IMG/VR virus record: IMGVR_UViG_3300032931_001151
Span: 1-64,000 of that record
Strand: one strand, 5' to 3'
DNA length: 64,000 nt
The first letter of the stretch is position 1, and each line of letters begins with the position of its first letter. The notes under the pieces are model-generated. The model saw only the letters and a list, made by a program, of their open reading frames with translations, was not told the origin of the DNA and made no database searches. The position numbers were made by a program, and so were the translations under genes. Positions 12,167-59,952 of the stretch are shown here, in pieces.

Positions 12167-13153
12167 ATGGACGATAATACATACGAACTAGCCAAGGCTT
12201 GGAAACAAATTGAAGAGAACTTGGTTCAATCGGTTAATCTTAATCCGGAAATGAATGAGAATGCGTTTAACTTTAATGTAGTTAAAAAGCAACTTGACGA
12301 TTTATATACAAATGTTGGCAAATCGGCTCAAAGTGCCGAATTTGCTGGAAATGATGTGTGGCTAATTTCCGGAAACTATCCTTTAAAAAACATAGGAGCA
12401 TCGGCTATCTTCATATATGCTAATGATGATGTATATAGAGGTAGTGATACTTTTGATTTATTTAAGAGAGTCGTTCTACCTTCCACCGAATATGAAGATG
12501 CTACACTTGAGAGCGGATCTATTGAAGAAGTACTTAGTAAAGCACAAGAGATAAATGTCGGAAAGGCACTTAAAGAAGTTGATTCTCCCGATGAAGCCAT
12601 TGCTAGAAGAGATAGAGATGAACAATCTAAGAACAACTTAAAAACTATTAAATTAGATGGACGAGTTGCCGATTTACTTGATATGAATATGAAGGAAATG
12701 GGTAATACGGAGTGGACCGATGGATATCAAGGTGATGGGCCATATCTACCCAAAGAAGTTGAAGACTATATACTAAATGCTATTGGTAATGATACCGAAG
12801 AACCATTTAAGGTTAGATTCATCAAATACGGATCATCAAGCCCATTAGAAGGTCGTGGAAGCCCCCTTTATGTTGAATATGAACAAGAAACTACCCCAGG
12901 ACATACCGAGTTTGGATTAAGAGATATGACCGAGCAAAGCGAATTGCCAATTGGAGAATTACATAAGTTAGTTAAAGTAAACGATTTAGGTAGTACTATT
13001 GACATTAGTTTTGGAATTGTTAGAATAGCAACAATTGAGCAAGAAGAGGCTGGGTGGGATATTTACATCCACGGGAAGCCACTTGCCGTTACTTATAATA
13101 CAAAGGAAGATGCCTTTACGGCACTTGTTAATTATCTAAATGATGAGAAATAA
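12167..13153 (+). CDS. Acidic late protein (putative internal head protein)
   Basis: ELAKAWKQIEE at the N-terminus; several [ILM]-x-E sites. Confidence 0.65.
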   Translation: MDDNTYELAKAWKQIEENLVQSVNLNPEMNENAFNFNVVKKQLDDLYTNVGKSAQSAEFAGNDVWLISGNYPLKNIGASAIFIYANDDVYRGSDTFDLFKRVVLPSTEYEDATLESGSIEEVLSKAQEINVGKALKEVDSPDEAIARRDRDEQSKNNLKTIKLDGRVADLLDMNMKEMGNTEWTDGYQGDGPYLPKEVEDYILNAIGNDTEEPFKVRFIKYGSSSPLEGRGSPLYVEYEQETTPGHTEFGLRDMTEQSELPIGELHKLVKVNDLGSTIDISFGIVRIATIEQEEAGWDIYIHGKPLAVTYNTKEDAFTALVNYLNDEK

Positions 13154-13901
13154 AATATTACAATATTTCATAGAAGGTAAAACTGCTGGGGATAAGTACG
13201 GGGATTTTGTAATTCAAAATGGGAAGATGTTATTTAATAGAGTGGGCGGATTGGGTGCTAAATATCAAGACAATACATGGGCACCCGAAAAAAGAGGAAT
13301 TTGGGCATTTCCATATCCTTTATTTGAATCATTTTTTATAAGTGGTCCATTTAGTATGCCTTCCCAACATAGTCCTAAAAAGTCAAAAATAGTAAAAATT
13401 GATTCAAAATTAAGAAATCAATTAGAGAAAAGACTAAGAGGATTAAAAACAAAAATGGAAATCGGTATATCAAAATTAAAATCAACCGAAGATAACCCAT
13501 TCCCAAAATATTTTGGTCACGAAAAATATGAAATTGAAGATTTAGAAAAAGCATTAAAAGATGGTGAAATAGATTCAATTAAATTAAGTTCTTCAATGAA
13601 ACATAAGTATAAACCAACAAATAAAATTCGTAGATTTTATTGGGGTGGCCCAATTTGGGCAAGATTTGCACCAAAAGGAGAAGAAGTTACTGAAAATGGT
13701 TGGTACAAATATGATGATATATATAGTTATATCAAAGAATTAAGAAAATATTTATTTGAGTGGAGAAGAGATTCATTATATGGAAGTAAAGATAATAAAG
13801 GAATTTTGTATAAGATAGGAGTTCCAATAGCATCTAAAGATGCTAACATGAGCATGGATCATTTGGAAGTATTTTTACCTATGAGCGGAAATCGTGACTG
13901 A
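13140..13901 (+). CDS. Late hypothetical protein with the shared N-terminal motif
   Basis: MRNKILQYFIEG. Confidence 0.7.
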   Translation: MMRNKILQYFIEGKTAGDKYGDFVIQNGKMLFNRVGGLGAKYQDNTWAPEKRGIWAFPYPLFESFFISGPFSMPSQHSPKKSKIVKIDSKLRNQLEKRLRGLKTKMEIGISKLKSTEDNPFPKYFGHEKYEIEDLEKALKDGEIDSIKLSSSMKHKYKPTNKIRRFYWGGPIWARFAPKGEEVTENGWYKYDDIYSYIKELRKYLFEWRRDSLYGSKDNKGILYKIGVPIASKDANMSMDHLEVFLPMSGNRD

Positions 13902-14205
13902 AATTCAACATCTATACGATAGAGCAACTAAAATTCTAACTAATATAGAATGTATAAAGTCTATTACTCAAAAAATTATTGATGAAAAAGAAATGGGAAT
14001 CAAAATAGATAAGAAAGAAATTCTTAATTTAGCAAGTATAATAAAACAACTTATGGAAAGATATAATGCTATTCTTGAATGTATTGCTAAATCGCATATA
14101 TCATTTGAAGAGAAAGAAACTATTATGGATATGCTAGATACTTCTAGAAAATCTATAATGTCACTTAATAATGCTATTAATGTGGTTCAAAAAAAGATTA
14201 TTTAA
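13894..14205 (+). CDS. Hypothetical coiled-coil protein
   Basis: GTG start overlapping the upstream gene. Confidence 0.6.
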   Translation: MTEIQHLYDRATKILTNIECIKSITQKIIDEKEMGIKIDKKEILNLASIIKQLMERYNAILECIAKSHISFEEKETIMDMLDTSRKSIMSLNNAINVVQKKII

Positions 14206-18375: not shown

Positions 18376-18580
18376 TATTAAATTCCTTTAAAAGATAATT
18401 GACGGCGAATTCTTTATTAGAAAGTCCAACATATTTCCGAGAATCTATTGCTTCTTGCGGAACATCAATTTTAACACCATTATTATAGAAGTCAAGAGTT
18501 TGGATATCTAAGGCATTGAATTCTTTGATTATATTAAGAGCAAACTTGAGTGGCTCCAAGTCGTATTTTAGTTTATCCAC
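18368..18580 (-). CDS. Hypothetical protein (probable GTG start overlapping the radical SAM stop)
   Basis: The N-terminal extension in the track is just another frame of the GGCG tail. Confidence 0.55.
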   Translation of the reverse strand: MDKLKYDLEPLKFALNIIKEFNALDIQTLDFYNNGVKIDVPQEAIDSRKYVGLSNKEFAVNYLLKEFNNV

Positions 18581-19661
18581 ATCCACCCCCACACCCTCCA
18601 CCGCATGATGATGGCCTTGATCCACACCCACCACTATGATAATTACAAGTAGTTGACTTCGTGCTACCTAAAAGTTTCTTGTTAACTTCTTCAATTCCCG
18701 ACAACTTCTCAATTATCTTCTTATGAGAAGTTTCTTGAATCTCCTTATGTGCCTCAAATTCTTTTACGAGATTGGCCCATTTCTCATACCAAAAGGCTCC
18801 ATCGGGTGATGTAGGTTTCATATTAGTATCTACCTCTATCTTTCTAGACCAATCAGCATAAAGTTTGCCATTAGGATGGAATACAAGTTCATATAATTTG
18901 TTAAGGTATTGTGATGGTTCCGGATGTGATCCTTTCCACAATATTTGTTTATCTTTGCTAACTTGAATGGTTGTTCGACATACTGGACAATCATTACTTG
19001 ACTCAATACCCCATCTCTTCGTAAATATTTTTTCTACATTAGTTGGAGACACATCACCAGCCTCTTTACGGAATGAAATTGAACCAACTTCCAAATGTAC
19101 GAAAGCGTAGGCTATCATATGTTGAATAAATGCTTCGGTAGTTGAATCATTAATTATACAATTAATATTGAATTGATACTTATTTCCGTAATTCCTTATT
19201 ATATTCTTAATATTTGGCGTTGTTGGAACTACTTTACTCTTAAATATCTTTTGATTTTCATTATCATCAAAATGATGTCTTGAAATATTAATATGAGTAA
19301 CTACTTCCATAAGTTTCAAGTCATCTTTAAGCCAACTTTCTAATGCCGATCCATTAGTAGTTAGAACGACTCTATCCCATTTTCTATTTGAATTCTTTAT
19401 TGTATGTAGAATTGCACCAAGATGACCACTAATAGTTGGTTCCCCGCCAGAAATAGATAATGCCGGACAAATGCTATAAGGAATTTCATTAAATGCTTTA
19501 ATGAGGGATTGGATGTAATCGGAAGGTGGAACTATTTTACCGTCCTTACTATTCCAAAAACAAAACCCGCACTTAGCATTACAAAAGCCAGGTGTAATAA
19601 TGGTGAAATTAGGTTTATGACCACCTTCCGTGTATAAATCGGTTAGAATATTATATTTCAT
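18573..19661 (-). CDS. Radical SAM protein with a Gly/Cys-rich C-terminal tail
   Basis: CNAKCGFC (CX3CX2C), ISGGEPT, TTNG, NISRH; ends HSGGCGSRPSSCGGGCGGGCG. Confidence 0.9.
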   Translation of the reverse strand: MKYNILTDLYTEGGHKPNFTIITPGFCNAKCGFCFWNSKDGKIVPPSDYIQSLIKAFNEIPYSICPALSISGGEPTISGHLGAILHTIKNSNRKWDRVVLTTNGSALESWLKDDLKLMEVVTHINISRHHFDDNENQKIFKSKVVPTTPNIKNIIRNYGNKYQFNINCIINDSTTEAFIQHMIAYAFVHLEVGSISFRKEAGDVSPTNVEKIFTKRWGIESSNDCPVCRTTIQVSKDKQILWKGSHPEPSQYLNKLYELVFHPNGKLYADWSRKIEVDTNMKPTSPDGAFWYEKWANLVKEFEAHKEIQETSHKKIIEKLSGIEEVNKKLLGSTKSTTCNYHSGGCGSRPSSCGGGCGGGCG

Positions 19662-23399: not shown

Positions 23400-23668
23400 T
23401 TCAATATTCCTTTTAATTTTCTTTCATAAGATTTAATATAAGCGATTTGATCTTCTTGATCAACATCATATCGTGGCATTGGATGAAAGTCAATAGGATT
23501 CTTTCCTTGACTTATAAGTTCTTGTTTTTCCTTTGAAATTAATTCAAGTACCTTATTATATTCTTTATTGACTAACTCTATAGTAGATGGATCTTTGCAA
23601 GAACAACAATACTTAAGCAATCCAATAAGCATTTGTTGTCGTAAAATTAAATCACTTAAAGTGGCCAC
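23396..23668 (-). CDS. Hypothetical protein
   Basis: 90 aa, coupled. Confidence 0.55.
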   Translation of the reverse strand: MATLSDLILRQQMLIGLLKYCCSCKDPSTIELVNKEYNKVLELISKEKQELISQGKNPIDFHPMPRYDVDQEDQIAYIKSYERKLKGILK

Positions 23669-24833
23669 AAAACCTCTTTAAATCTTCCGTATCATTATTT
23701 AATTGTCTAAACCAAATATTAGTTAACATTGCTCGTTGAGCAACCCCAATTTTTGACTTGTCTTTGGAATTGGAAATATCTAAAATAGAAATAATCTCTT
23801 CTCCGCTAATTTTTAACTCTTTAGGGGTTATTGCGAAATCCATCATATCTTGAATAATTAATACCACTTGGGTACTAACCTCTTGAAAAACACTTAATAA
23901 AATATGTAATTGTGGTTTTAAGTTGCCTATGATAGTATGTGGTAATGCCTTATCATCTACAATTCTTCTGGCTAACTCTACCACCTTAATGCAATTAGCA
24001 TCGGGCTTCATTATATTAAAGTCTCCACCATTTAAAAAGAATGCAACAAACATCCCAATTATCTTTTCTTCACCTTTTAACGAACTTAATTTAACTTTGA
24101 TAGGATTGAAAGTATCCCCAAAAACAACTTTCCCAATAGTTAATTCGTTTAATAAGTCAATTAATATAGAGGTATTTCCTTTAGTCCATGCTTTCTTTAA
24201 CTCATCAAAGATTCTCTCACCAGAAACACTCTTTAATGTGGGTGCTAACTCCTTAATAGCCTCTTTAGTTTCTTGGGAGATAGTAAAGCCTAAACGAGAA
24301 GAAAATTGAATTGCTCTTAAAATTCTTAAACTATCCTCAGAGAACCTATCAAATGGATTCCCAACCGTTCTAATGACTTTATTCTTAATATCTTCTAATC
24401 CATTATGAGGATCAATTAAACCACTTAAGTCATTATTAATGAAATTCCTTAATGGTAATGCCATTGAATTTATCGTGAAATCCCTACGAGATAAATCTGC
24501 TTCAATAGTAGCATTTGGGTCGGTTTGAACACTAAAATCCGTATGAGAGTTACCAGTTTTAATCTCTTTGATTCTTGGAATAGCAAAGTCAAATTCTTGA
24601 CCATGTACTACACCCTTAACGATGCCAAAAGATTGACCAACTTCTCCAGCTTTACCTATCTTATTAATAGCATTAGAAATTTGCTCTAAAGTTACTTTTC
24701 TAACTAAAAAGTCAATATCTTTAGGGATAATTCCTAATATCTTATCACGAATTGGTCCACCAACAACAAAGATTTCGGCACCAACTGACTCTAAGGTGCT
24801 TAAAATCTTCTCTAAAGTTTCTTTATTATCCAT
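23652..24833 (-). CDS. cca: CCA-adding enzyme / tRNA nucleotidyltransferase (class II)
   Basis: VGGPIRD, DIDF, DLSRRDFTINSMA, FSEDSLRILRAIQFSSRL, SGERI. Confidence 0.9.
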   Translation of the reverse strand: MDNKETLEKILSTLESVGAEIFVVGGPIRDKILGIIPKDIDFLVRKVTLEQISNAINKIGKAGEVGQSFGIVKGVVHGQEFDFAIPRIKEIKTGNSHTDFSVQTDPNATIEADLSRRDFTINSMALPLRNFINNDLSGLIDPHNGLEDIKNKVIRTVGNPFDRFSEDSLRILRAIQFSSRLGFTISQETKEAIKELAPTLKSVSGERIFDELKKAWTKGNTSILIDLLNELTIGKVVFGDTFNPIKVKLSSLKGEEKIIGMFVAFFLNGGDFNIMKPDANCIKVVELARRIVDDKALPHTIIGNLKPQLHILLSVFQEVSTQVVLIIQDMMDFAITPKELKISGEEIISILDISNSKDKSKIGVAQRAMLTNIWFRQLNNDTEDLKRFCGHFK

Positions 24834-26647: not shown

Positions 26648-26675
26648 ATTATATAAAGAATCTGCAATAAGTCAA
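26648..26675 (-). promoter_or_regulatory. Early promoter TTGACT-N16-TATAAT (pncA-pth2 operon)
   Basis: The -35 box overlaps the stop of the upstream gene. Confidence 0.8.
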
Positions 26676-27178: not shown

Positions 27179-27179
27179 A

Positions 27180-27425: not shown

Positions 27426-27428
27426 ACA

Positions 27429-27794: not shown

Positions 27795-27797
27795 GTA

Positions 27798-42491: not shown

Positions 42492-43160
42492 ATGTCACTA
42501 AGAAATAAAATAATTAATTTATTTGAGGCTCATGACTTGTTTGATCAACAAGGAAGTATTAATGTGGACCACGGAGAAATCGGAAATAGAGATCAAATGG
42601 GTAGTATGTGGCATTCTTATCCAAGCATTGATTATGCCATGCTTGAAGATGGAGAAAAACCAAGAATATACATTGATATGGATAGTGTTTTATGCGATTT
42701 TGTTAAATCTTTCAAAGAAAAAGTCGGAATTTCCCCCGAAGAGTATGAAGCAACTAACGGAAAAAATGCTTTTTGGGATATTATAGAGTCTTGGGGAGAG
42801 GATTTTTGGGAAACTCTACCGTGGATGCCAGATGGAAAAGAACTTTGGAATTATGTATCTAAATATAATCCCATAATACTATCTGCTGCAATGGCTGGAT
42901 ATCAAAGAAGAGGAAAATCAAAGTGGCTTCAAAAAGAAATAGGATATTCCGATACTCCTATAGTTAATCCAAGTAATTGGAAAGGCCAATCTAAAGTAAT
43001 ATTTCATAAAGACAAATGGAGATTTATTCTAGAAAAAAACGAAATATTAATTGATGACACCGAAAGCAAGATTGAACCTTGGCACGATAATGGCGGAATC
43101 GGTATACTTCACACATCCGCTAAAAATACTATAGAGTATTTGAAAAAAATTGGATTATAA
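42492..43160 (+). CDS. HAD-family 5'(3')-deoxyribonucleotidase with an N-terminal late-protein extension
   Basis: IYIDMDSVLCDF, FWETLPWMPDG, ILS, K, ILIDD; start at the ATG 42492 after GAGG (MSLRNKIINLFEA). Confidence 0.85.
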   Translation: MSLRNKIINLFEAHDLFDQQGSINVDHGEIGNRDQMGSMWHSYPSIDYAMLEDGEKPRIYIDMDSVLCDFVKSFKEKVGISPEEYEATNGKNAFWDIIESWGEDFWETLPWMPDGKELWNYVSKYNPIILSAAMAGYQRRGKSKWLQKEIGYSDTPIVNPSNWKGQSKVIFHKDKWRFILEKNEILIDDTESKIEPWHDNGGIGILHTSAKNTIEYLKKIGL

Positions 43161-43163: not shown

Positions 43164-43182
43164 CTATTAATTGGAGACGAAA

Positions 43183-46380: not shown

Positions 46381-46394
46381 TAGGAATTAATCTT

Positions 46395-46985: not shown

Positions 46986-47004
46986 AAAGTTATAAGGATT
47001 TTTA

Positions 47005-48285
47005 ATGACCGCCCTTACAACATCCACGACCTCTATAACCGCAGATATAAGTGGAATTTTAACTTTTGGTCATTTAGCCCAGCATCCGGCGGCGGGGGCT
47101 ATACATGCTATAGGTGGAACATATCCACTAGATTCGTATTTGTCTCCATTAAATTTTACAACTTTTAGATCTACACAATCAAAAATAGTATCTAATATAT
47201 CAAGATATAGATCTTACGGCATGAAATTAGTTCCAGTTATGTCTGATGATTTTGGATATTATGTTACTAATTTCCCAGGAGATCCGGCATATCCTCTATC
47301 AACTTGGGAATCTTGGGTAACTAATTATGTAAATCAAATGGTTTCTAATGGATTTGTAGATGCTTGGTGTATTGATATTTGGAATGAACCCAATTTATCC
47401 CAATTTTGGCCTAGACCTTTTAGTCAATTTTGTGATGTGTGGATCACGGCAGCGGCTACAATAAAATCCCTACAACCTACTTGGAAAGTTTGCGGCCCAT
47501 CATTGTCTCAATATGATGGCACTTTAATAGGGCAATTTTTTAATGCATGTAAAAATGCCGGCGTATATCCTGATGTTATTAGCTTCCATCAAACCGCCAT
47601 TCAGTATTTTAATCTAAATGAGCCGTGGGAATTTCCGACGAATCTTGAAACAACTAATACTATGGCAACTTCAGCCGGAATTTCGGGAAAACCATTTTTT
47701 CTTGGAGAATACATTTCTTCGGGTCTTGATATAACACGGCCTGGGCCGGCAGCTTCTTGGATGATATCAATGGATTCGGCTGGAACAAATGCAGTTTCAG
47801 CGGCGTGCCACTCAACCTTTCCGGAATCGGATTATGCGGATCCTTTATTAAATACCGGAGATAATATAGACAATAGCACTAGAGATACATTGTGTGGCAT
47901 CTTATCACCGGATAATATGCCTAGGGCCGTATGGTTTTTATATAGAGATTATGCAAATATGACCGGGATTATGGCTTCCGACTTATCAGCCGCAATATTA
48001 GTAAACGTCGATAATGAAAAAAAAGAATTTAATGCTATATATTGTGCTAAAAGCCCAACTACTAAAAGACAATTTATAATAATCAAAAATTTTGGCGAGG
48101 TTTTTTCTCCAAATAGAATTATGTATACTATAATAAAATATCAAGATAGTGCTTGGGCCAAATGCTCAACACCTCCATTAGTGGAATATGGAACTATTCT
48201 TAATAATTTTGATAATATTATATTGAGAATTCCTCCGTTTTCAGCTGGAACAGAAGCAATACACATAAAAATGGTTTCAAGGTGA
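47005..48285 (+). CDS. Clan GH-A glycoside hydrolase (GH39-like)
   Basis: DIWNEPNL..FW, KVCGPS, DVISFH, FLGEY, GIL....PR. Confidence 0.75.
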   Translation: MTALTTSTTSITADISGILTFGHLAQHPAAGAIHAIGGTYPLDSYLSPLNFTTFRSTQSKIVSNISRYRSYGMKLVPVMSDDFGYYVTNFPGDPAYPLSTWESWVTNYVNQMVSNGFVDAWCIDIWNEPNLSQFWPRPFSQFCDVWITAAATIKSLQPTWKVCGPSLSQYDGTLIGQFFNACKNAGVYPDVISFHQTAIQYFNLNEPWEFPTNLETTNTMATSAGISGKPFFLGEYISSGLDITRPGPAASWMISMDSAGTNAVSAACHSTFPESDYADPLLNTGDNIDNSTRDTLCGILSPDNMPRAVWFLYRDYANMTGIMASDLSAAILVNVDNEKKEFNAIYCAKSPTTKRQFIIIKNFGEVFSPNRIMYTIIKYQDSAWAKCSTPPLVEYGTILNNFDNIILRIPPFSAGTEAIHIKMVSR

Positions 48286-48288
48286 CAT

Positions 48289-51200
48289 ATGACTATAATA
48301 AATACGGTACAATATGCGTTTGACGGATCTAGAACTTTATTAGACACAACTTGCTATAGTTTTCTATCCTATAGCACGGAAGACGGATATGCCGATTACA
48401 CGGAAGAGTCAAAAACTGGATATGGCGCTGGGGATTATATAATTTTTAATAATGTTGTAGGATCCGAGTGGTATATAGGATCGGATGTTTCATTTCAATC
48501 TTTATATATGGCACTTAATACTATAGGAGTAAAGGGAACTGGAAATATAGTTTGGGAATACGCATCCGGCCCAAGCACTTGGTCTACCTTAACGATGGCT
48601 GGTTCTGGAACAGCCGATTTAACATCCCCAACTTATGAGGCGGCATTAGATTGGGATACTCCTAGCGATTGGGTTGATTCTACTGTTAATGAAATATCGG
48701 CAAGATGGATTAGATGCAGAATGACCTCTACATATACTACTCCACCAGCTATAATATTTGCTAGTATTGGTAGAACTACTTATTGGTCTAAAACTATAGA
48801 TATTCCATATACTTCAATAAATTGGCAATCTACATATTTAGATTGGAGTTTATATTTAAATAATAATTATGGGGCTATTAGATTCGTTGCGGTATATGCT
48901 AGATTGGGCGGAACTGGATCTTGGGTTAGATTAACTAGTCCAAGTACGGGATATACCGGAACAAATAATCAAATGTCCATAAAAAATATAATTGATTTAT
49001 ATCCACTATTCAAATTAAATTGGATTGCGGGAGATACTCAACTATTAGAAATTAGATTTGCTATAACCGCCATTTCTTCTAATAATGGATCGGATTACGT
49101 AACAGAGTTAGCAGGAAGATTAAATCTAACCTATCAATACGATGCGACGGAAAACAACGATACAATAATAAAAACTATTAGAATTCCGTTGAAAAGTTTA
49201 CCAAATGGAATATCAAATATAGATCAATTAGTTGATACTATTCCCGCATTAAATACATTTTTGCCAGAATCAAGTAAAATAATAAAAGATTGGTGGATAG
49301 AAGTAGAAGGAAATAATTGTAACAACGAATCTGATAATTCGGTATACGGATTACAAGCACACATTGATAATCTATCTAGTGAGTATTTAATAAATTGTGT
49401 AAATACTTCTTTTAGTAGTTCTTATCATTGGTCGGTATATAGTTTAAATAGTTTAGATTTAGATACTTCTAATTCTCATTCTTTCTATCTTATGGCAACC
49501 GAGCCGAATAACTTATTTAATACGGTCAATAGTGTCGTTTATGTTACATATACTTATAGTAAATCGTTATCTACTACCGTATTACAATCCTTAATAATAC
49601 CACTTGGATATGCTTCAACTCCATTAAGAACTTCAGATGCTATTAATAGTGATGGACAGCAATTCAACTTAACTAGACCTATATGGATAGCAGAGCCTGG
49701 AAATATAACTATACAAAAATCGGGCATAAGAATAACTTGCGAAGAACTAACTTATGCCTCAAATGCACAAGTATATGCAATACAAACTGTTGGAGATTCC
49801 GCATTTACCGAGTATCAAATCGGAACTAGAGGGAACCCGGCTGGACAAATTAGTATCATGCATCCGCTAGATAATCTAAGTCTTATTCATGGTAAAAATT
49901 ATATTGGATTAACCATGTATTCTTTATATAATGACTTCGTTAGTAGAGGTAGAAGTCATGTCTTATACTTAAATTATACATCAAATGTAGACCCAAAAGG
50001 AGAATGGAGGCATAATAAAACTATTATGTCATTATTAATGAATATGAGTTATGTTGAAGGAACGTGGGCAAATTATGCAAATTTTTGTAGCATTGGAACA
50101 TCCGAACAAAGTAACTATTTAATAAACGACGCTTCTTTAATGATATACGAAACTGGCCAAGTATCTCAACCATTCAATTTATATGCTACTATATACAATG
50201 ATACAAGCCAACATACCGCATTACAATGGAGTATGGAACATAGTGGACCAATAAAGTTCTTAACTACGGAACATACAAGTCAATTCTATGTTCCAGTTCT
50301 TGAATGGTTTTCTCAAATTAGTGATGGAATAAAACCTATAAGTAATGTAAGTGGAAAAATGAAACCATATATAGGAAATGGATATGGAATCATAGCAACC
50401 CAAAACTCATTAAAAAGTTTAATTGGCATGACAACTTTCCATAGTATATCAACGGATATTTCGGGGCGCATGTATAGAATGCCCGGAACACCAAATGAAG
50501 TTATATTAATTTCATCGGATGTACAAGATTTAGGTTGTATAACTAAACAAGCCACCATTAATAGTGATGGTACATATAGCATTTCATGGCCAGATGACTC
50601 TGCCGATATCGCTATATTGGCACACTATTCTGGATCGGCATATGCTATAACTCAAAGAAATAAATCGTCTATACCAAAGTATATCCCACCCGCACAACCA
50701 CTACCATTTAAAATGCTAATTGATACCACTAAAGATGGATCGGCAACAAATCACTTCATACTACCGTTGGATGGTGTATCTACATATAACTTTGATATAG
50801 ATTGGGGCGACTCAAATATACAAACAATAACATCAAATACATCTATTGATCATACATATTCCGCTCCTGGGGTATATACTATTAGCATCACCGAAAATGT
50901 AGTAGGCGGATTCCCAACTATCTACTTCAATAATATGGGCGATTGTCTCAAGCTTATGCAGATTTCTCAATGGGGTACTAATAAGTGGGTATCACTCATT
51001 AGATCGTTTAATGGATGTAGTAATATGAATATCGTCGCCACCGATGTAGCGACTGCTAATACTAGTTCTATTACTAGTTTAAGTTATGCATGGCGTAATT
51101 GTTCCGGGTTGACTTCGTTCCCACTCATCAATACATCAAATGTTACGGACTTTGAAGGTGCGTGGTGGAATTGTTCCGGGTTGACTTCGTTCCCACTCAT

Positions 51201-53646
51201 CAATACATCAAATGGCACCGGATTCTCCGGTGCTTGGTATGGATGTTCCGGGTTGACTTCGTTCCCACTCATTAACACCGCAAACGGCATCAACTTCTCG
51301 TATACTTGGGGTAATTGTACCAATTTAACATCAGTCCCGCTTCTTAACATGCGGAAGATCACTAACGGCTCTCAATGTTTCTTAAACGACACTTTAGACA
51401 CCACTTCGTATAGTGACTTGTTGATCGACATGGCACTTGGGGTCACAACTAGTGTAACATTTGATGGTGGCAATAGTAAATACAACACTGCGGGTTCTAC
51501 TGCTCGCTCTACACTAGAAGGTCGTGATTGGACTATTATTGATGGTGGTGTCGCACCCGTAGTGTCCAGTCCAATGATATTAATTGTTGATACGACCAAG
51601 ACTGGTAGTGCTAATAATATATTCATATTACCATGTAATGGTTCTGGTTATGACGCCCAAATTGACTGGGGGGACGGAGACGTTGAAACTATTACCGGAT
51701 CACCTGGAAATGTAACTCACGAATATTCCTCTTCCGGCATCTATAATGTATCAATTTTAGAAAATGTTGTAGGTGGATTCCCAACCATATACTTCAATAA
51801 TAGTGGTGACTGTCTCAAGCTTATGCAACTTTCTCAATGGGGTACTAACAAATGGATCTCGTTCGTCCATTCATTCCATGGATGTGGTAATTTAACTATT
51901 ACCGCTACCGATTCCGCAACCGCCAACACTGGATCCGTTGAGAATTTCAGTTTTGCTTGGCGTAGTTGTTCTAGCATGATATCCTTCCCACTCATTGATA
52001 CAAGTAGCGGCACTGATTTTAGTTATACTTGGGCGCAATGTAGTGGTTTGACATCCTTCCCTTTACTAGATACAAGTAATGTAATTAATTTTTCCGGCTC
52101 GTGGTTTCTTTGCAGTGGGTTGACATCCTTCCCACTCATTAACACGAGTAACGGAACTACCTTTACTTCTTCGTGGTCTAATTGTGGTAATTTGCTAGAA
52201 TTCCCATTACTAGATACCGCTAAGGGGACGGCTTTCAACGCCGCATGGCAAAATTGTTATTCTCTAACTTCATTCCCAGTATTAGATGTTGGCGAAGGAA
52301 TTAATTTCGCATCTACTTGGGGTGGTATTGGAGCGGCCACATTCCCACTATTGGATACAAGTAAGGGAACCGACTTCTCTAGTGCTTGGGTTAGTTCTAA
52401 CTTAACAGAATTCCCACTATTGGATACAAGTAAGGGAACCGACTTCTCTAGTGCTTGGAATGCTTGCACTAGTTTAACCTCATTCCCACTATTGGATACA
52501 AGTAATGGTACAAATTTTGATAGCACTTGGGCTTCTTGTTCAAATTTAACTAGTTTCCCAACTCTCAATCTACGAAAAATTACCACTGGATCGAGTTGTT
52601 TCAACAATACTCCTATTGGTACGGAATCATATAGCAACTTGCTAATTGATATGGCTCTCGGTGCAACTACGGGAGTGAACTTTGGAGCTGGAAGCAATAA
52701 ATACAGTGCTGCTGGCGCAACTGCTCGTGCCACATTAGTAGGACGTAGTTGGAATATTAGCGATGGCGGATCCGCCGCTTCAATGATCATTACAGTGGAT
52801 ACAACCCAACTTGGTAGTTCAGCATCTGACGCATTCACATTGCCTTGTTACGGATCAGACTATAATGCCACGATTAATTGGGGTGATGAATCTAGTCAAA
52901 CCATTACCGGTTCACCTGGCGATGTTACACACGTCTATAGTGACTATGGCGAAGGCACATACAATATTACGATTACCGAAAACGTAGTAGGCGGCTTCCC
53001 GACAATCTACTTCAATAATAGTGGTGATTGTCTCAAGCTTATGCAAATTTCTCAATGGGGAACCAACAAGTGGCTAGATATGAAGAATGCATTTTATGGA
53101 TGTAGAAATATGACTATAACTGCTACTGATGGAGCAACGGCTAATACGGGAGCAGTTACTAACTTCTCTTCCGCTTGGTTATATTGTTCTGGATTAACAT
53201 CATTCCCGCTCATTGATACTAGTAGTGGCATCAACTTCTCCGGAACTTGGGGGGGATGCTCTAACTTGACATCGTTCCCACTCATTAACACCGCCAACGG
53301 CACCGACTTCTCCTACACTTGGAATAGTTGTTATAATTTGGAATCGTTCTCACTCATTAACACCACCAATGGCACTAACTTCACCGGGACTTGGGCTTAT
53401 TGTGTTAAGTTGACATCATTCCCAACGATTAACCTACAGAATATTATATATGGCAATGGATGCTTCACTTCGGACACTCTAGATACCGACTCATATAGCA
53501 ACTTGCTAATCAACATGGCTCTTGGTGCTACTACTGGTGTTACTTTTGACGGTGGTAATAGTAAGTATAATACGGCAGGTGCTACCGCTCGTTCTACACT
53601 AGATGGTAGGAGTTGGATAATTACCGATGGTGGTGCCGCACCATAA
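48289..53646 (+). CDS. Large virion/receptor-binding protein (1785 aa) with three PKD + BspA/DUF285-like leucine-rich-repeat modules
   Basis: IDWGD...H.Y...G.Y.I.I (PKD) three times; about 22-aa repeats FS.AW..CSGLTSFPLIDTS.GT. Confidence 0.8.
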   Translation: MTIINTVQYAFDGSRTLLDTTCYSFLSYSTEDGYADYTEESKTGYGAGDYIIFNNVVGSEWYIGSDVSFQSLYMALNTIGVKGTGNIVWEYASGPSTWSTLTMAGSGTADLTSPTYEAALDWDTPSDWVDSTVNEISARWIRCRMTSTYTTPPAIIFASIGRTTYWSKTIDIPYTSINWQSTYLDWSLYLNNNYGAIRFVAVYARLGGTGSWVRLTSPSTGYTGTNNQMSIKNIIDLYPLFKLNWIAGDTQLLEIRFAITAISSNNGSDYVTELAGRLNLTYQYDATENNDTIIKTIRIPLKSLPNGISNIDQLVDTIPALNTFLPESSKIIKDWWIEVEGNNCNNESDNSVYGLQAHIDNLSSEYLINCVNTSFSSSYHWSVYSLNSLDLDTSNSHSFYLMATEPNNLFNTVNSVVYVTYTYSKSLSTTVLQSLIIPLGYASTPLRTSDAINSDGQQFNLTRPIWIAEPGNITIQKSGIRITCEELTYASNAQVYAIQTVGDSAFTEYQIGTRGNPAGQISIMHPLDNLSLIHGKNYIGLTMYSLYNDFVSRGRSHVLYLNYTSNVDPKGEWRHNKTIMSLLMNMSYVEGTWANYANFCSIGTSEQSNYLINDASLMIYETGQVSQPFNLYATIYNDTSQHTALQWSMEHSGPIKFLTTEHTSQFYVPVLEWFSQISDGIKPISNVSGKMKPYIGNGYGIIATQNSLKSLIGMTTFHSISTDISGRMYRMPGTPNEVILISSDVQDLGCITKQATINSDGTYSISWPDDSADIAILAHYSGSAYAITQRNKSSIPKYIPPAQPLPFKMLIDTTKDGSATNHFILPLDGVSTYNFDIDWGDSNIQTITSNTSIDHTYSAPGVYTISITENVVGGFPTIYFNNMGDCLKLMQISQWGTNKWVSLIRSFNGCSNMNIVATDVATANTSSITSLSYAWRNCSGLTSFPLINTSNVTDFEGAWWNCSGLTSFPLINTSNGTGFSGAWYGCSGLTSFPLINTANGINFSYTWGNCTNLTSVPLLNMRKITNGSQCFLNDTLDTTSYSDLLIDMALGVTTSVTFDGGNSKYNTAGSTARSTLEGRDWTIIDGGVAPVVSSPMILIVDTTKTGSANNIFILPCNGSGYDAQIDWGDGDVETITGSPGNVTHEYSSSGIYNVSILENVVGGFPTIYFNNSGDCLKLMQLSQWGTNKWISFVHSFHGCGNLTITATDSATANTGSVENFSFAWRSCSSMISFPLIDTSSGTDFSYTWAQCSGLTSFPLLDTSNVINFSGSWFLCSGLTSFPLINTSNGTTFTSSWSNCGNLLEFPLLDTAKGTAFNAAWQNCYSLTSFPVLDVGEGINFASTWGGIGAATFPLLDTSKGTDFSSAWVSSNLTEFPLLDTSKGTDFSSAWNACTSLTSFPLLDTSNGTNFDSTWASCSNLTSFPTLNLRKITTGSSCFNNTPIGTESYSNLLIDMALGATTGVNFGAGSNKYSAAGATARATLVGRSWNISDGGSAASMIITVDTTQLGSSASDAFTLPCYGSDYNATINWGDESSQTITGSPGDVTHVYSDYGEGTYNITITENVVGGFPTIYFNNSGDCLKLMQISQWGTNKWLDMKNAFYGCRNMTITATDGATANTGAVTNFSSAWLYCSGLTSFPLIDTSSGINFSGTWGGCSNLTSFPLINTANGTDFSYTWNSCYNLESFSLINTTNGTNFTGTWAYCVKLTSFPTINLQNIIYGNGCFTSDTLDTDSYSNLLINMALGATTGVTFDGGNSKYNTAGATARSTLDGRSWIITDGGAAP
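50704..53643 (+). repeat. Three tandem modules of about 0.85-1.2 kb, each containing tandem repeats of about 66-72 nt
   Basis: ENVVGGFPTIYFNN.GDCLKLMQ.SQWGTNKW three times; identical DNA blocks such as ATTCCCACTATTGGATACAAGTAAGGGAACCGACTTCTCTAGTGCTTGG at about 52341 and 52410. Confidence 0.9.
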
Positions 53647-55588: not shown

Positions 55589-55630
55589 ATTATAGTCCAA
55601 AAATTAAGATGTCAATAGTTGCTATAAATA
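55589..55630. promoter_or_regulatory. Divergent promoters: early TTGACA-N15-TATAAT (-, 55589-55615) and late TATAAATA (+, 55623-55630)
   Basis: At the strand switch. Confidence 0.78.
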
Positions 55631-55645: not shown

Positions 55646-55801
55646 ATGAGAAATAAAATAATAAAAGTATTTATTGAAAGAAAAAAGAAATCATTAATTA
55701 ATGATATGGTCAATATTGACCCTAATTCTAAAAGTGATCATATTCAACAACATATGATTCAAAAGCCCATTCAATCTGGATATTCAATAAACATTCCTTA
55801 A
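55646..55801 (+). CDS. 51-aa late protein with the shared N-terminal motif (absent from the ORF track)
   Basis: MRNKIIKVFIERKKKSLINDM.. after TATAAATA and GGGG RBS. Confidence 0.65.
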   Translation: MRNKIIKVFIERKKKSLINDMVNIDPNSKSDHIQQHMIQKPIQSGYSINIP

Positions 55802-56115: not shown

Positions 56116-56166
56116 TAATCCCCTATAATTATAAATAGGTTATAGAAGAACTATTTTAGGGGGTTA
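56116..56166 (+). promoter_or_regulatory. Late promoter TATAAATA (56130-56137) in the loop of an RBS-sequestering hairpin
   Basis: TAATCCCCTA (56116-56125) pairs with TAGGGGGTTA (56157-56166); ATG at 56169. Confidence 0.72.
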
Positions 56167-56168
56167 TA

Positions 56169-57077
56169 ATGGATATTAATAGAATAAGAAAAGCCTTACA
56201 AGAGGATGGGGGTGCGGTTGCCGCTGGAACTTCTTCTACCCCCGCCAATTCGGGTCCGGGATTAAATAGTCAAGGTATTGCGCCATTTAAAGCTAAAATG
56301 GGGTCTTGGAGAAGACAACAAGACGAAGAAGTAGATCCCCAATCCCCAGGAGTTGTTCAAAGTACCCAACATGCTTCCGATGCACAACTAATCAATCCTT
56401 GGGCTGGTAAACTTTCCGAAGTTACCCATGAAGTAGTTAATCTATTTGACGAAGAGCGAATGAATTACAAAGAAACTAGGTTAACCCCTTTTAGTGGATT
56501 ACAATTGGAAGATTTTGAAGTTGGAATAGAAAACATATACAATAAACTATCAAAGATTATTCATTACAATATAATGAATACTACGGATACTTCTAATAAA
56601 GATATTCATAAGTTAAAAAATAAATATAATATATTGAAGAGACAAGCATTACAACAAATTGAAGATGCTATTTACACTATAGAAGGTGGAACATCAACAA
56701 TATTAGAAGACGATTTAAATCTCGGTGATATATTCTTTGTAATGTGCATGATGAATGCATATAGTAGCGATGAAGGATATGACCCTCTTAAATATGCCGA
56801 TTCACAAGTTGATAGATTACTTGAAATTTCTAAAGATGATGCAATTGAGTTGGTTCACCATTTATATAAAACTTTAATTCCAACTTTAAAACCAACAAAA
56901 TCTTCAAAATTAGGAATAGCATCGGAAACTTTAGATGCTATTAATAAAGAAAAATGGGGAGAAGCATTATTTTGGAATAAACTCCGAAAAACTCTTGAAG
57001 TCATGACACCAACCAACGACTCTAACGAATATGATACCGAATTACCACAAGAAGAACCGGAAGAAGAAAATGTTTAA
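56169..57077 (+). CDS. Late hypothetical protein (putative virion/internal protein)
   Basis: MDINRIRKALQEDGGAVAAG.. Confidence 0.7.
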   Translation: MDINRIRKALQEDGGAVAAGTSSTPANSGPGLNSQGIAPFKAKMGSWRRQQDEEVDPQSPGVVQSTQHASDAQLINPWAGKLSEVTHEVVNLFDEERMNYKETRLTPFSGLQLEDFEVGIENIYNKLSKIIHYNIMNTTDTSNKDIHKLKNKYNILKRQALQQIEDAIYTIEGGTSTILEDDLNLGDIFFVMCMMNAYSSDEGYDPLKYADSQVDRLLEISKDDAIELVHHLYKTLIPTLKPTKSSKLGIASETLDAINKEKWGEALFWNKLRKTLEVMTPTNDSNEYDTELPQEEPEEENV

Positions 57078-57528
57078 AAATAAAATATTAAAGTTGTTTG
57101 AAAGCCCTAACGATTCGTTTCCCGGATCGGTTTCGAGAATTGGTATAGGAAGCCAATCGTCAACTCAAAGCGGATTACAATCTCGTTGTCCTTCTTTTCC
57201 ATTACAAGGAAATCAATCAATACACGAAGAAGAAATCCCACAAGATGCCATTGAACCTCTACAATTAAATGATATAACTATTGAAGGCTACATTGTTGTT
57301 AAAAATGGAACCCCAACCAATATTAGATATAAATTAATAAAAAATGGGGTTCCTTTACCCGTAGATCCAACTAAAGAAAAAAGTAAAAATATAGGACACA
57401 CATCCCATCAAGTATTAAAAAAATTATCAATGTTGTCAAATAAGATTCAATTAATTAAAAAATTCATTCAATATGACAGAAAGAACATTATTAATTTAAA
57501 AACTAAACAACAATCGAAAATTGGATAA
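57070..57528 (+). CDS. Late protein with the shared N-terminal motif
   Basis: Start moved to the ATG at 57070: MFKNKILKLFES. Confidence 0.7.
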   Translation: MFKNKILKLFESPNDSFPGSVSRIGIGSQSSTQSGLQSRCPSFPLQGNQSIHEEEIPQDAIEPLQLNDITIEGYIVVKNGTPTNIRYKLIKNGVPLPVDPTKEKSKNIGHTSHQVLKKLSMLSNKIQLIKKFIQYDRKNIINLKTKQQSKIG

Positions 57529-57531: not shown

Positions 57532-58956
57532 ATGTCCCCCGTGACTCCTATAATAAATACTAATTTTTATGGATTTGATTATTATGAGGTTGCATATACT
57601 TGTGTGGGCGTGCAATATCCAGTTTTGGGGGATGTGATATTCCCTAATATAACATTTTCTAAAGCACCCTATCAAGAATTAATAGCCAATATATCCGTAA
57701 AAGATTGCCCCACTCCGCAAACCGTTGATCAACTATTTACAACTAGTTTATCAAGTAGGTCTACCATTACAATAAACGACATAAGAGCAAACAATATAAT
57801 AGCAGACAATATAGGAATTCAATTCTATACTACAAATTGGGAAGATTCTTTAATTCTTTGCGACGAAATAAATAATGCACACACTTTAAACATTAGTATT
57901 GATGGAAGTTATGCAACCGCCGAACAATTAGAACTTGCTAAAGAACAAAATTGGGATACTTGGTGGAATACACTATTATCTATGAAAGTTGACTTGACCG
58001 ACTATTTCCAAATGGGAGACACTCAACTTTATAGTGGAGGTTCAAAAAGAGATTCGCTAAATTTAGTTGGTAGACTTATAGTTCCAAGCCATACAATAGT
58101 CTCAAGAAGTGGAGTTACAACTATAAGTGCAGGAGATATATTTAATGCTTGTAGTAATAATTATACTATTTCTATAGGCTATGAGGCTTTTACACAATAT
58201 TTTGAATCGCCATATGGAAGTTGTTGCATTATACAAAATGACATGCAAAAAAATTGGACTATTTCAACAAGCATGTCTTCGCCATATAACATTACTATTA
58301 CCCCCCTACATATGAATGATACTAATGGTCAAATACTATTAAATATACCTTCTAAGTTTTTTGACGATATAAGATCGAATCCGTCGCTATTAAATCAACA
58401 ATTTACACTTCAATGGACTATTAATCTAACAGTTCAAGGCGATTGTTTAGCCAATGCCATGGTAGATAAGTATATTAACACATTGTATCCATATAGCAAC
58501 CAAGGACAATTATATTATCAACCCGGATGTGGTATAATTTTCAATAATGCACAAGAGTATGCTTCAACTATTTTAGCCACTTTAGATACTATGAAAACTA
58601 CCATTAGAAGTTTATTTTCAACTACTTATAATTGCTATGTTCGATTATTGTCGCAAACCGATATGTATGGGGATATTATTATTGGCAAAGGTAGATTCTA
58701 CAATCACCACGGCTCGGAATGTTCTTTCTTATTAAAACAAGTTCTTAGACCAATAATAAATGTTCCAACTTCTAATGAAACTACAAAAGGGCTTACGTTA
58801 CCAAACTCTAATGCCGTAGTACCAACTATTCAAACTAGTACTATAATTCCTACTACATTAGCACCTAATATTAGTCCAACTACCTTTTCTAATCTATTCA
58901 AGAAAACCGGCAATAAATTATGTCAAGTTTTACCAACAAATCTCAAATATAAATAA
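57532..58956 (+). CDS. Putative structural protein
   Basis: 474 aa, Thr/Ile/Asn-rich, in the late operon. Confidence 0.65.
   Translation: MSPVTPIINTNFYGFDYYEVAYTCVGVQYPVLGDVIFPNITFSKAPYQELIANISVKDCPTPQTVDQLFTTSLSSRSTITINDIRANNIIADNIGIQFYTTNWEDSLILCDEINNAHTLNISIDGSYATAEQLELAKEQNWDTWWNTLLSMKVDLTDYFQMGDTQLYSGGSKRDSLNLVGRLIVPSHTIVSRSGVTTISAGDIFNACSNNYTISIGYEAFTQYFESPYGSCCIIQNDMQKNWTISTSMSSPYNITITPLHMNDTNGQILLNIPSKFFDDIRSNPSLLNQQFTLQWTINLTVQGDCLANAMVDKYINTLYPYSNQGQLYYQPGCGIIFNNAQEYASTILATLDTMKTTIRSLFSTTYNCYVRLLSQTDMYGDIIIGKGRFYNHHGSECSFLLKQVLRPIINVPTSNETTKGLTLPNSNAVVPTIQTSTIIPTTLAPNISPTTFSNLFKKTGNKLCQVLPTNLKYK
58948..58955 (+). promoter_or_regulatory. Late promoter TATAAATA
   Basis: About 22 nt upstream of the ATG at 58978. 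Confidence 0.65.
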
Positions 58957-58977
58957 TAGAATAAAAGGATATTTTCA

Positions 58978-59952
58978 ATGGACCTGAAAAGTAGAATTAA
59001 ATCATTATTTACAGAGGGCTTACTAATAGAAAAAGCCGATGTAAGTAATATTATTGGTAAAAAGAAAATACTAAAGAAACAATCGGTGAAAAAAAGTAAG
59101 ATAAAAAGCAAAAGAAAAAATAACTTTAAAACTCAAGATGCAAGAAGAATATTGGCATCTAAACACGGTGTTAGCAATGCTTTAAAGAAAATGGAAAATA
59201 AATATGTAATGGATTATGCAGAAATTGCAAAACTAATGAGGAAATATAGTTATACCTTCAATAAAGACAAGGGAAGTTGGCTAAAGAAGAAAGATGTCGG
59301 ATCCGAAGTCAAATCAACGTCTACTAAAGCAACTATTGAGCCAACTTCAAATAAACCCGAAACTTCTAAACCAAAAGAGTCTAAAAAGGCAAAAATTAAA
59401 GTTGCTAAAATTGATGATATTGAAGATAAATTAAAATCCGATAAATCTTCAAGTATGAAGAAGTCTTCAAATATTGAAGATAAAAATGTTATAAGTAATG
59501 AGAGTATGAAGAGTTATCAAGGAAGATTAATATCCTATTTATTAAATTCAAATAATGAAGAGGGTGGATGGCTTGATGCTATACAAATAGTTGACGAAGA
59601 GCCTTTAGAATTCTATCTACCAAAAGAATCCATTTACGAGTACCTATCAAATCAAGATATTACTTGGATAGAAGATCGTAAAGTGTGGGTTGACATAGAC
59701 GGAGATTACCCAATTTCCAACGAAATTCATAATGGTAGAATAGGAATAACCGCAAGAGCAATATTGGCTAATAACGGATTTATTAATTTCCTTAATGTTG
59801 ATGAAGTAAGTGATGAAGAAACTCTTGACTCTATACGAGAACTGGGATATAATTGGGGCGATGGCATGTGGGTTAAACCCGAAATAACCACCGAAATTGT
59901 TAAAAGACAATTCCCCGAATTAGTAACCAATGACATTATAGGCACAATATAA
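58978..59952 (+). CDS. Late protein with a Lys-rich N-half (putative DNA-binding internal protein)
   Basis: MDLKSRIKSLFTEGLLIEK; basic N-half and acidic C-half. Confidence 0.7.
   Translation: MDLKSRIKSLFTEGLLIEKADVSNIIGKKKILKKQSVKKSKIKSKRKNNFKTQDARRILASKHGVSNALKKMENKYVMDYAEIAKLMRKYSYTFNKDKGSWLKKKDVGSEVKSTSTKATIEPTSNKPETSKPKESKKAKIKVAKIDDIEDKLKSDKSSSMKKSSNIEDKNVISNESMKSYQGRLISYLLNSNNEEGGWLDAIQIVDEEPLEFYLPKESIYEYLSNQDITWIEDRKVWVDIDGDYPISNEIHNGRIGITARAILANNGFINFLNVDEVSDEETLDSIRELGYNWGDGMWVKPEITTEIVKRQFPELVTNDIIGTI

What the first reader, a model, noticed from the sequence alone, without database searches (positions are those of the whole stretch)
13140..59040. Shared N-terminal signal on late proteins: candidate capsid-targeting / prohead-protease leader
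Seen: unrelated plus-strand genes downstream of TATAAATA-type promoters begin MRNKILQYFIE (13143), MSLRNKIINLFE (42492), MRNKIIKVFIE (55646), MFKNKILKLFE (57070), MDLKSRIKSLFTE (58978) and, more loosely, MDINRIRKALQE (56169). The 2H enzyme carries a similar string at its C-terminus (SLKESIIETFIK). Known: T4 internal proteins have an approximately 10-aa capsid targeting sequence removed by the gp21 protease after Glu. Inference: consensus [KR]-N-K-I-[IL]-x-[LVY]-F-x(0,1)-E is a packaging signal for injected proteins and could be used to load cargo.
Basis: partly seen in the sequence, partly recalled or inferred. Interest (0 to 1): 0.7.

Follow-up and report, generated by a model that had tools for sequence, protein, structure and literature searches.

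The report
Capsid-targeting leader in divergent T4-like phage
Seven otherwise unrelated late proteins of an uncultured T4-like phage begin with the same 11-13 residue tag, which copies the start of the phage's own head scaffold and ends at a predicted head-protease cut site. It is most likely this lineage's version of the T4 signal that loads proteins into the capsid.

Summary
All six N-terminal strings are at the stated coordinates. A strict form of the motif hits five times in the six-frame translation of the whole 214 kb genome (0.15 expected), each time at an ORF start. A seventh carrier lies outside the window.

The genome is a deeply divergent T4-like phage: its gp23 is about 35% identical to any cultured phage. 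It has a gp21-type prohead protease, and its own gp21, gp22 and gp23 carry the same hydrophobic-x-Glu strings at their N-termini or at the predicted maturation site.

The leader is kept in orthologues at about 60% identity through synonymous codon changes. It also sits on other, unrelated proteins in phages whose gp23 is only 56-66% identical. It is modular: the closest homologues of one cargo keep it, while the next closest have it precisely deleted, and one of those genes sits in an early-type gene row.

One carrier lies two genes downstream of the 57B/Acb1 homologue, echoing T4's 57B-ipI order.

Best reading: a clade-specific capsid-targeting and prohead-protease propeptide, a new variant of the T4 CTS. 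Packaging, cleavage and injection are inferred, not shown. The C-terminal string on the 2H enzyme is not supported as a signal.

The parts
13143..13175 (+). Leader MRNKILQYFIE of ORF 13143-13901 (252 aa, basic, no known family). Predicted cut after Glu11, before Gly.
   Evidence: The two closest homologues keep the leader; the next five (53-60% id) have a 6-residue deletion exactly over it. AlphaFold gives helix 3-12 at low confidence.
42492..42527 (+). Leader MSLRNKIINLFE of ORF 42492-43160, an NT5C/HAD 5'(3')-deoxyribonucleotidase-like enzyme with a ~55 aa N-terminal extension. A possible second site, YAMLE, lies just before the HAD domain.
   Evidence: phrog_2643 at 8e-25. Fourteen closest homologues keep the leader and extension; distant PF06941 homologues lack them.
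55646..55678 (+). Leader MRNKIIKVFIE of the 51 aa ORF 55646-55801 (mature 40 aa, pI 9.7).
   Evidence: Orthologues in L036 and L037 begin MKHKILKIFIE and MKDKIIKVFIE.
56169..56204 (+). Looser leader MDINRIRKALQE of ORF 56169-57077 (302 aa). Residues 16-41 copy the maturation site and mature N-terminus of gp23.
   Evidence: Orthologues begin MDISRIRKALHE and MDIKRIKNAFFE. Similar MDI.(E/R)IRK N-termini occur in distant members of the 118579 family.
57070..57102 (+). Leader MFKNKILKLFE of ORF 57070-57528 (152 aa, pI 9.7). Its start overlaps the end of the preceding gene.
   Evidence: Orthologues begin MNKRIAQIFE and MRDRIAKIFE.
58978..59016 (+). Leader MDLKSRIKSLFTE of ORF 58978-59952 (324 aa, very basic N-terminal third). 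A second L-x-E follows at residues 16-18.
   Evidence: M1, I7, F11 and E13 are invariant in 16 homologues, while the residue between F and E varies freely. Codons change synonymously.
55623..55630 (+). T4-type late promoter box TATAAATA upstream of 55646. Further boxes at 56130-56137, 58948-58955, 10759-10766 and 43156-43163; near-consensus GATAAATA at 42470-42477.
   Evidence: The octamer is rarer than composition predicts (15 and 25 per strand against about 35 expected).
11614..12156 (+). Acb1 / T4 57B homologue (2H phosphoesterase), two genes upstream of the leader gene 13143 in the same orientation. Context, not a carrier of the signal.
   Evidence: PF23474 at 1.7e-12. T4 gene order is 57A-57B-ipI.
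59845..59943 (+). C-terminal tail of the 58978 protein, which resembles gp23 residues 55-86 (FPELV.NDxxG).
   Evidence: Conserved in the full-length homologues.

Best explanation
The shared N-terminus is this phage lineage's capsid-targeting propeptide, the functional counterpart of the T4 CTS.

Proposed mechanism:
- A short N-terminal helix with consensus [KR]-[NS]-[KR]-I-[KI]-x-[LI]-F-(x)-Glu imitates the N-terminus of the scaffold protein gp22.
- Late in infection it takes the protein into the assembling prohead core.
- The gp21-type serine protease then cuts after the Glu, before a small residue (Ala, Gly or Ser).
- The mature protein is released inside the head, to stay with the DNA or, for core-like members, to be degraded further.

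The tag is modular. It has been gained or lost on individual proteins and marks different cargo in related phages, including an NT5C-type nucleotidase here.

Shown: the motif, its N-terminal restriction, its conservation and modularity, the protease gene, and the matching strings in gp21, gp22 and gp23.

Inferred: binding to the core, cleavage, retention and injection.
For: 1. Non-random and N-terminal only: 5 hits against 0.15 expected, all at ORF starts, plus a seventh carrier at genome 118579(-) beginning MSNKIKSLFYE.

2. The machinery is present. Peptidase_S77 scores 89.5 bits at genome 146718-147176(-), and gp23 is found at 2.2e-100. The presumed catalytic His and Ser columns are invariant in an 18-sequence alignment that includes T4 gp21.

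3. The phage's own head proteins carry the same string:
- gp22 starts MEKTVIEKLFE followed by N.
- gp21 has KLIVE and IIKVFTE before the catalytic domain.
- gp23 has KYFAE followed by AAGTSS where T4 gp23 is cut.
- Across 25 related loci gp22 starts ..K[IV]LAKLFE-G or ..LLE-G, and gp21 starts M.KLI[TV]E.
- T4 shows the same relation: CTS MKTYQEFIAE (PMC8442874), gp22 MLKEQLIAE, gp21 MNEPQLLIE.

4. Protein-level conservation. Orthologues at about 60% identity keep the leader with synonymous codon changes. In 49 collected leaders, I at -4 is present in 47 of 49, F is fixed by the anchoring pattern, and P1' is A, G or S in 39 of 49. Many of these 49 are orthologues, so they are not independent.

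5. Modularity.
- In the 13143 family the two closest homologues carry the leader and five have it exactly deleted. One leaderless copy sits in a row of ligase/NAPRTase/NAD-synthase genes with no TATAAATA upstream.
- NT5C homologues carry the extension only in the closest 14.
- Unrelated proteins in phages with 56-66% gp23 identity start with the same leader: DUF5661/GNAT-type proteins and unknowns.

6. Late context. TATAAATA or a near-consensus lies upstream of 5 of the 7 carriers; the other two, 13143 and 57070, lie in plus-strand operons behind one. No copy is in the minus-strand ligase / radical-SAM / poly(A)-polymerase genes.

7. Synteny with T4's 57B-ipI.

8. Redundant second sites just downstream (LIE in 58978, IIAE in 118579, YAMLE in 42492), as reported for giant-phage propeptides (PMC9026906).
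Against: - No experimental datum exists: no virion proteome, no N-terminal sequence and no cultured relative (nearest cultured gp23 about 35% identical).
- The leader has no sequence identity with the T4 CTS beyond the hydrophobic pattern and the terminal Glu.
- P3 is often Phe rather than the Leu/Ile of T4 sites.
- The 55.6-60 kb operon is conserved and syntenic in relatives. That fits essential core proteins better than fast-evolving injected effectors.
- The complex prediction of gp21 with the 51 aa carrier gave no verdict.
- Amphipathicity of the leader is only modestly above background.
Confidence: 0.72

Rival explanations
1. The tag is a prohead-protease propeptide, but the carriers are core or scaffold accessory proteins (functional analogues of T4 gp67, gp68 and the internal peptides). 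They would be built into the core and then degraded or expelled, not kept and injected as effectors.
For: - The 55.6-60 kb operon is syntenic and conserved at about 60% identity in relatives.
- Only one ORF (351 aa, starting MPEEIIKKFQD) lies between portal and protease, where T4 has gp67 and gp68.
- The 118579 family is widespread, with 34 representatives and an acidic low-complexity region.
- The leader equals the N-terminus of the scaffold itself.
Against: - Several carriers are basic like the T4 IPs (pI 9.1-9.7).
- One is an intact-looking enzyme with the HAD DxDxV motif, which has no obvious role as scaffold.
- The leader is gained and lost on single proteins.
- This rival probably applies to some carriers and not to others.
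Confidence: 0.3
2. The N-terminal helix serves a purpose unrelated to the head, such as membrane association, binding of an assembly chaperone, or targeting to tail or baseplate. The terminal Glu would then be incidental.
For: - In several relatives the leader-bearing gene sits among baseplate-like genes.
- The window carriers lie near putative fibre or structural genes.
Against: - The same string is at the N-terminus of gp22 and gp21 and at the gp23 maturation site.
- Glu and the small P1' residue are conserved while the residue between F and E is free.
- No protease is known for T4-type tails (general knowledge).
Confidence: 0.08
3. The similarity is selected at the nucleotide level: an A-rich translation-initiation region or a recombination cassette shared by late genes. 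It would not be a peptide signal.
For: Three leaders share AGAAATAAAATA. AT-rich, Lys/Asn-rich starts are common in AT-rich genomes.
Against: - Orthologues keep the residues through synonymous changes: Leu CTG/CTA/TTA, Ser AGT/TCT, Phe TTT/TTC, Glu GAG/GAA.
- The hydrophobic and Glu positions are the conserved ones.
- The motif is absent from all other genes, including other late genes such as 57532 and 43171.
Confidence: 0.03

Closest known systems
T4 capsid targeting sequence (CTS) of internal proteins IPI, IPII, IPIII and Alt, removed by the gp21 prohead protease
   Same: - A roughly 10-13 residue N-terminal tag on unrelated late proteins, ending in hydrophobic-x-Glu and cut before a small residue.
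- It resembles the N-termini of the phage's own gp22 and gp21.
- A gp21-family protease is encoded in the genome.
- One carrier lies just downstream of the 57B homologue, as ipI does in T4.
- Cargo varies between related phages.
(PMC9026906, PMC8442874, PMC3012670)
   Different: - No sequence identity to MKTYQEFIAE. The consensus here is [KR]N[KR]I[KI]x[LI]F(x)E, with an N-terminal basic triplet and Phe or Leu at P3.
- There are at least seven carriers, scattered in four late units rather than in one IP locus.
- The cargo includes an NT5C-type nucleotidase.
- The host phage shares only about 35% gp23 identity with any cultured phage.
- Nothing has been verified experimentally.
Propeptides of head and inner-body proteins of giant phages (phiKZ gp175, 201phi2-1, SPN3US gp245 substrates)
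   Same: - Many head proteins are cut after Glu by a gp21-related protease.
- Propeptides contain redundant cleavage sites.
- Ejected proteins are among the substrates (PMC9026906).
   Different: - Those sites have almost no determinants beyond Glu and share no common N-terminal leader.
- Here a defined 10-residue leader is shared.
- The phage is a T4-type genome with gp20-21-22-23 synteny.
T4 prohead core proteins gp67 and gp68 and the gp22 N-terminus
   Same: - Core components are cut at L/I-x-Glu.
- The gp22 N-terminus has the leader-like string in both phages.
   Different: No sequence homologue of gp67 or gp68 was detected. The carriers here are encoded far from the head module, about 85-130 kb away.

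Membership tests
T4-type CTS / gp21 propeptide system | Short N-terminal sequence (about 10 aa) ending in Glu, on late proteins whose mature parts are unrelated | tested here: met
   Leaders are 11-13 aa. Mature parts are unrelated.
T4-type CTS / gp21 propeptide system | Cleavage motif with hydrophobic P3 (L/I in T4), any P2, Glu at P1 and a small P1' residue | tested here: met
   P3 is Leu or Phe in all seven carriers. P1' is A, G or S in 39 of 49 collected leaders. The T4 motif is taken from PMC9026906.
T4-type CTS / gp21 propeptide system | gp21-family (Peptidase_S77) prohead protease in the same genome, with catalytic His and Ser | tested here: met
   PF03420 scores 89.5 bits against a cut-off of 27; phrog_207 at 2e-53. 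H85 and S138 are invariant in an alignment that includes T4 gp21. That these are the catalytic residues is my own knowledge.
T4-type CTS / gp21 propeptide system | Same type of site in the phage's own gp22, gp21 and gp23 | tested here: met
   The sites are predicted by alignment to T4, not measured.
T4-type CTS / gp21 propeptide system | Late transcription | tested here: inconclusive
   TATAAATA or a near-consensus lies upstream, or the carrier lies in an operon downstream of one, for all seven carriers. No expression data were examined.
T4-type CTS / gp21 propeptide system | Sequence similarity to the T4 CTS MKTYQEFIAE | tested here: not met
   Only the hydrophobic spacing and the terminal Glu are shared (PMC8442874). 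It therefore works like a CTS but is not the same sequence family.
T4-type CTS / gp21 propeptide system | Physical encapsidation, removal of the leader and delivery into the host | not testable with these tools
   No cultured relative and no proteome. The complex prediction gave no verdict.
T4-like phage (gp20-21-22-23 head module) | Portal, protease, scaffold and major capsid protein in T4 order | tested here: met
   Genome 143997-149985 on the minus strand.

The most novel reading that the evidence does not exclude
The tag marks a set of pre-packaged enzymes that are injected with the DNA and act before any phage gene is expressed: an NT5C-type nucleotidase here, and a 2H phosphoesterase and DUF5661/GNAT proteins in relatives. 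One possible target is host nucleotide-based immune signalling or nucleotide pools. In addition, two carriers (56169 and 58978) may dock to the inner capsid wall through copied pieces of the gp23 N-terminal arm.
Probability: 0.15. Interest if true: 0.75.

Novelty: new variant of a known kind. Interest (0 to 1): 0.55.

Why it matters
It extends the T4 capsid-targeting principle to a deeply divergent, uncultured T4-like lineage and gives a simple rule: the tag copies the scaffold's own N-terminus. That rule could be used to predict encapsidated proteins from sequence alone in other T4-type phages.

It also yields a concrete list of candidate virion-internal proteins. The list includes an enzyme and cases where the tag was gained or lost on an otherwise conserved protein. 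These are natural experiments on how phages recruit proteins for co-injection. A defined short tag is also a practical handle for loading cargo into such capsids.

Tried and rejected
- **Complex prediction** of gp21 (17-row alignment) with the 51 aa carrier: no verdict, score 0.00. This counts neither for nor against.
- **Fold of the 13143 protein:** pLDDT 67, no PDB match with E below 0.5.
- **Fold of the 58978 protein:** pLDDT 56, too poor to search.
- **Pfam and PHROGs:** nothing for 13143, 55646, 56169, 57070, 57532, 58978, 118579 or the 351 aa ORF.
- **The search for related loci in IMG/VR** with the 13143, 58978 (single sequence and alignment) and Acb1 proteins: no relatives. Megablast against cultured phages found no match.
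- **Whole records behind the Logan/ENA loci** could not be scanned.
- **Helical hydrophobic moment** of the leaders is only modestly above background, so it is not used as evidence.
- **C-terminal string of the 2H enzyme** rejected as a signal. It has no terminal Glu, it is C-terminal, and its conservation is untestable.
- **Chance and nucleotide-level explanations** rejected.
- **Literature:** no paper found describing a CTS outside the T-even group or a virion-associated deoxyribonucleotidase in T4-like phages.


Full report
**What the window is**

The window is the first 64 kb of a 214,200 bp IMG/VR virus record with about 32% G+C. The genome encodes a Peptidase_S77 (T4 gp21) prohead protease and a gp23 major capsid protein. 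These lie in a T4-order head module: portal, a 351 aa ORF, protease, scaffold, capsid protein, at genome 143997-149985 on the minus strand.

No cultured phage is close. Megablast finds nothing. By tblastn the best cultured gp23 is about 35% identical (Kyanoviridae-type cyanophages). The nearest uncultured IMG/VR contigs reach 56-66%.

In the window the minus strand carries metabolic, early-type genes: DNA ligase, three radical-SAM enzymes, a poly(A)-polymerase-like enzyme and a glycosyltransferase. Three plus-strand blocks (10.5-14.2, 42.5-53.6 and 55.6-64 kb) carry the genes discussed here, together with a virion structural protein, a PKD-rich 1785 aa protein and an RNA ligase/gp63 homologue.

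**The observation**

- A strict pattern derived from them occurs five times in the six-frame translation of the whole genome, each time at the start of a plus-strand ORF in the window.
- It occurs zero times in reversed sequences and 0.15 times on average in residue shuffles.
- A small profile finds a seventh carrier outside the window: a 446 aa ORF at genome 117239-118579 (minus strand) beginning MSNKIKSLFYE, with TATAAATA 47 bp upstream.
- An unbiased all-against-all comparison of N-termini puts the leader pairs on top once true paralogues are set aside.
- After the leader the seven proteins show no similarity to one another.

**Link to the head machinery**

The phage's own head proteins carry the same string.

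- The scaffold gp22 begins MEKTVIEKLFE followed by N.
- The protease has KLIVE at residues 5-9 and IIKVFTE at residues 20-26, ahead of the catalytic domain.
- gp23 has KYFAE followed by AAGTSS at the place where T4 gp23 is cut.
- In 25 related loci gp22 begins with ..K[IV]LAKLFE-G or ..LLE-G, and gp21 begins with M.KLI[TV]E.

T4 shows the same relation. Its CTS is MKTYQEFIAE (PMC8442874). From the T4 record, gp22 begins MLKEQLIAE and gp21 begins MNEPQLLIE. T4 gp21 cuts after L/I-x-Glu. In the T4 CTS, residues 4 and 7 serve targeting and residues 8 and 10 serve processing (PMC9026906).

Here the constant core is I-[KI]-x-[LI]-F, followed by Glu directly or after one free residue. P3 is therefore Leu or Phe. 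P1' is Ala, Gly or Ser in 39 of 49 collected leaders.

**Conservation**

Two Logan contigs (L036, L037) carry the syntenic operon at about 60% amino-acid identity. Orthologues of 55646, 56169, 57070 and 58978 all keep their leaders behind TATAAATA boxes. The non-leader genes 55858 and 57532 have none. The codons of conserved leader residues differ synonymously, so selection acts on the peptide.

In 16 homologues of the 58978 protein, M1, I7, F11 and E13 are invariant, and the residue between F and E is free. The 14 closest homologues of the 42492 protein keep both the leader and a roughly 50-residue linker ending YAM[LI]E. More distant NT5C (PF06941) enzymes start directly at the HAD domain.

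**Modularity**

In the 13143 family the query and its two closest homologues carry the leader. The next five (53-60% identical) have a six-residue deletion exactly over it. One of these leaderless genes lies on a 204 kb contig in a co-directional row of ligase, NAPRTase and NAD-synthase genes, with no TATAAATA in the 240 bp upstream.

Conversely, the same leader heads unrelated proteins in IMG/VR phages with 56-66% gp23 identity. Examples are MKKYLRNKIKSLFIE, MKKQIRNKIKSLFTE, MDLKNKIKELFIE, MKYLKNKIIDIFSE and ..KNKIIQLFTE. These sit on DUF5661-containing proteins, one with a weak, sub-threshold GNAT match, and on proteins without a family. A weaker leader-like start sits on a 2H phosphoesterase in L004.

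The 118579 family has 34 representatives. Most full-length members begin with a lineage-specific helix ending in hydrophobic-x-Glu, followed by an acidic region.

**Genomic context**

The 13143 gene lies two genes downstream of an Acb1/57B homologue, in the same operon orientation. In T4 the order is 57A-57B-ipI. This positional echo supports the view that 13143 occupies an IP-type slot.

**Interpretation**

The simplest account of all this is a clade-specific capsid-targeting and prohead-protease propeptide. The tag resembles the scaffold's own N-terminus, so I infer that it uses the same contacts to enter the core. The protease then removes it.

Which carriers stay in the head and are injected, and which are core components that get degraded, cannot be decided from sequence.

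- The basic proteins (13143, 55646, 57070, 58978; pI 9.1-9.7) resemble the T4 IPs.
- The conserved, syntenic operon and the widespread acidic 118579 family look more like core proteins.
- The NT5C-type enzyme keeps the HAD motif I (DMDSV). It is the most interesting candidate for a delivered enzyme.

I put 0.72 on the propeptide and targeting reading as a whole. I put much less on injection of any given carrier.

**What is not supported**

The C-terminal SLKESIIETFIKS of the Acb1-like protein lacks the Glu and sits at the wrong end. I could not test its conservation.

**Side finding**

Two carriers contain pieces of gp23.

- Residues 16-41 of the 56169 protein match gp23 residues 40-65 (73% identity, genome-wide tblastn E 3e-8). 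This stretch covers the maturation site and the first 25 residues of mature gp23.
- The last 33 residues of the 58978 protein match gp23 residues 55-86 (45% identity, E 0.002 genome-wide). This tail, FPELVT.DIIG, is conserved in the family.

The first piece may simply be a borrowed cleavage cassette. The second suggests docking to the capsid protein. Neither idea was tested further.

**Novelty**

The principle has been known in T4 since the 1990s, and CTS-like sequences are noted for T-even relatives (PMC9026906, PMC3012670). I found no report outside that group.

This is therefore a new variant of a known kind. It has a different consensus, a clear identity with the scaffold N-terminus, documented gain and loss, and enzyme cargo, all in a lineage without cultured members.

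Noticed in passing
window 56214-56291 and 59845-59943; gp23 at genome 143997-145352 (-): Two leader-bearing proteins contain copies of adjacent pieces of the gp23 N-terminal region. One covers the maturation site plus the mature N-terminus; the other covers the FPELV.ND..G strand. They are the only such copies in the genome, and the second is conserved across its family.
   Followed up: partly
window 11614-12156 (+): Acb1 / T4 57B-type anti-CBASS 2H phosphoesterase in a late-oriented operon. It has a roughly 20-30 residue C-terminal extension beyond the Pfam domain. Gene order echoes T4 57B-ipI.
   Followed up: partly
window 26672-28199 (-), next to 28190-29308 (-): Four tandem small paralogues share the N-terminus K(F/I)R.(G/D)FVTNSSSS. 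They lie directly beside a SPASM-domain protein (radical-SAM-associated). Two further radical-SAM genes lie at 18573-19661 and 32724-33695.
   Followed up: no
window 42492-43160 (+): An NT5C/HAD nucleotidase with a conserved roughly 50-residue linker (AHDLFD.QGS ... WHSYPS.DYAM[LI]E) between leader and catalytic domain. In Pelagibacter phage HTVC008M and Methylophilales phage Melnitz the homologous gene sits among structural-looking genes.
   Followed up: partly
genome 147269-148324 (-), outside the window: The only ORF between portal and protease (351 aa) starts MPEEIIKKFQD. This is leader-like but ends in Asp where the leaders have Glu. In T4 an Asp at that position allows targeting without cleavage (PMC9026906).
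   Followed up: no
window 33748-33909 (-): A small ORF starts MEVIKRAFEELG, resembling the gp22 N-terminus, with TATAAATT just upstream. It lies within the otherwise early-type minus-strand block.
   Followed up: no
L004 8838-9299; L005 to L010 at about 10.4-11.8 kb: In related phages a variable slot after a baseplate-like gene holds leader-bearing proteins with different domains: DUF5661 alone, DUF5661 plus a weak GNAT-like match, or a 2H-SAK phosphoesterase with a weaker leader.
   Followed up: partly
window 43171-53646 (+): A late block of large proteins, probably a fibre or host-recognition module: a 1069 aa virion structural protein (phrog_1645), a GH39-like 426 aa protein, and a 1785 aa protein with PKD repeats.
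   Followed up: no
window 23652-24833 (-): A poly(A) polymerase / CCA-adding-type nucleotidyltransferase gene. No tRNA genes were found in the window.
   Followed up: no
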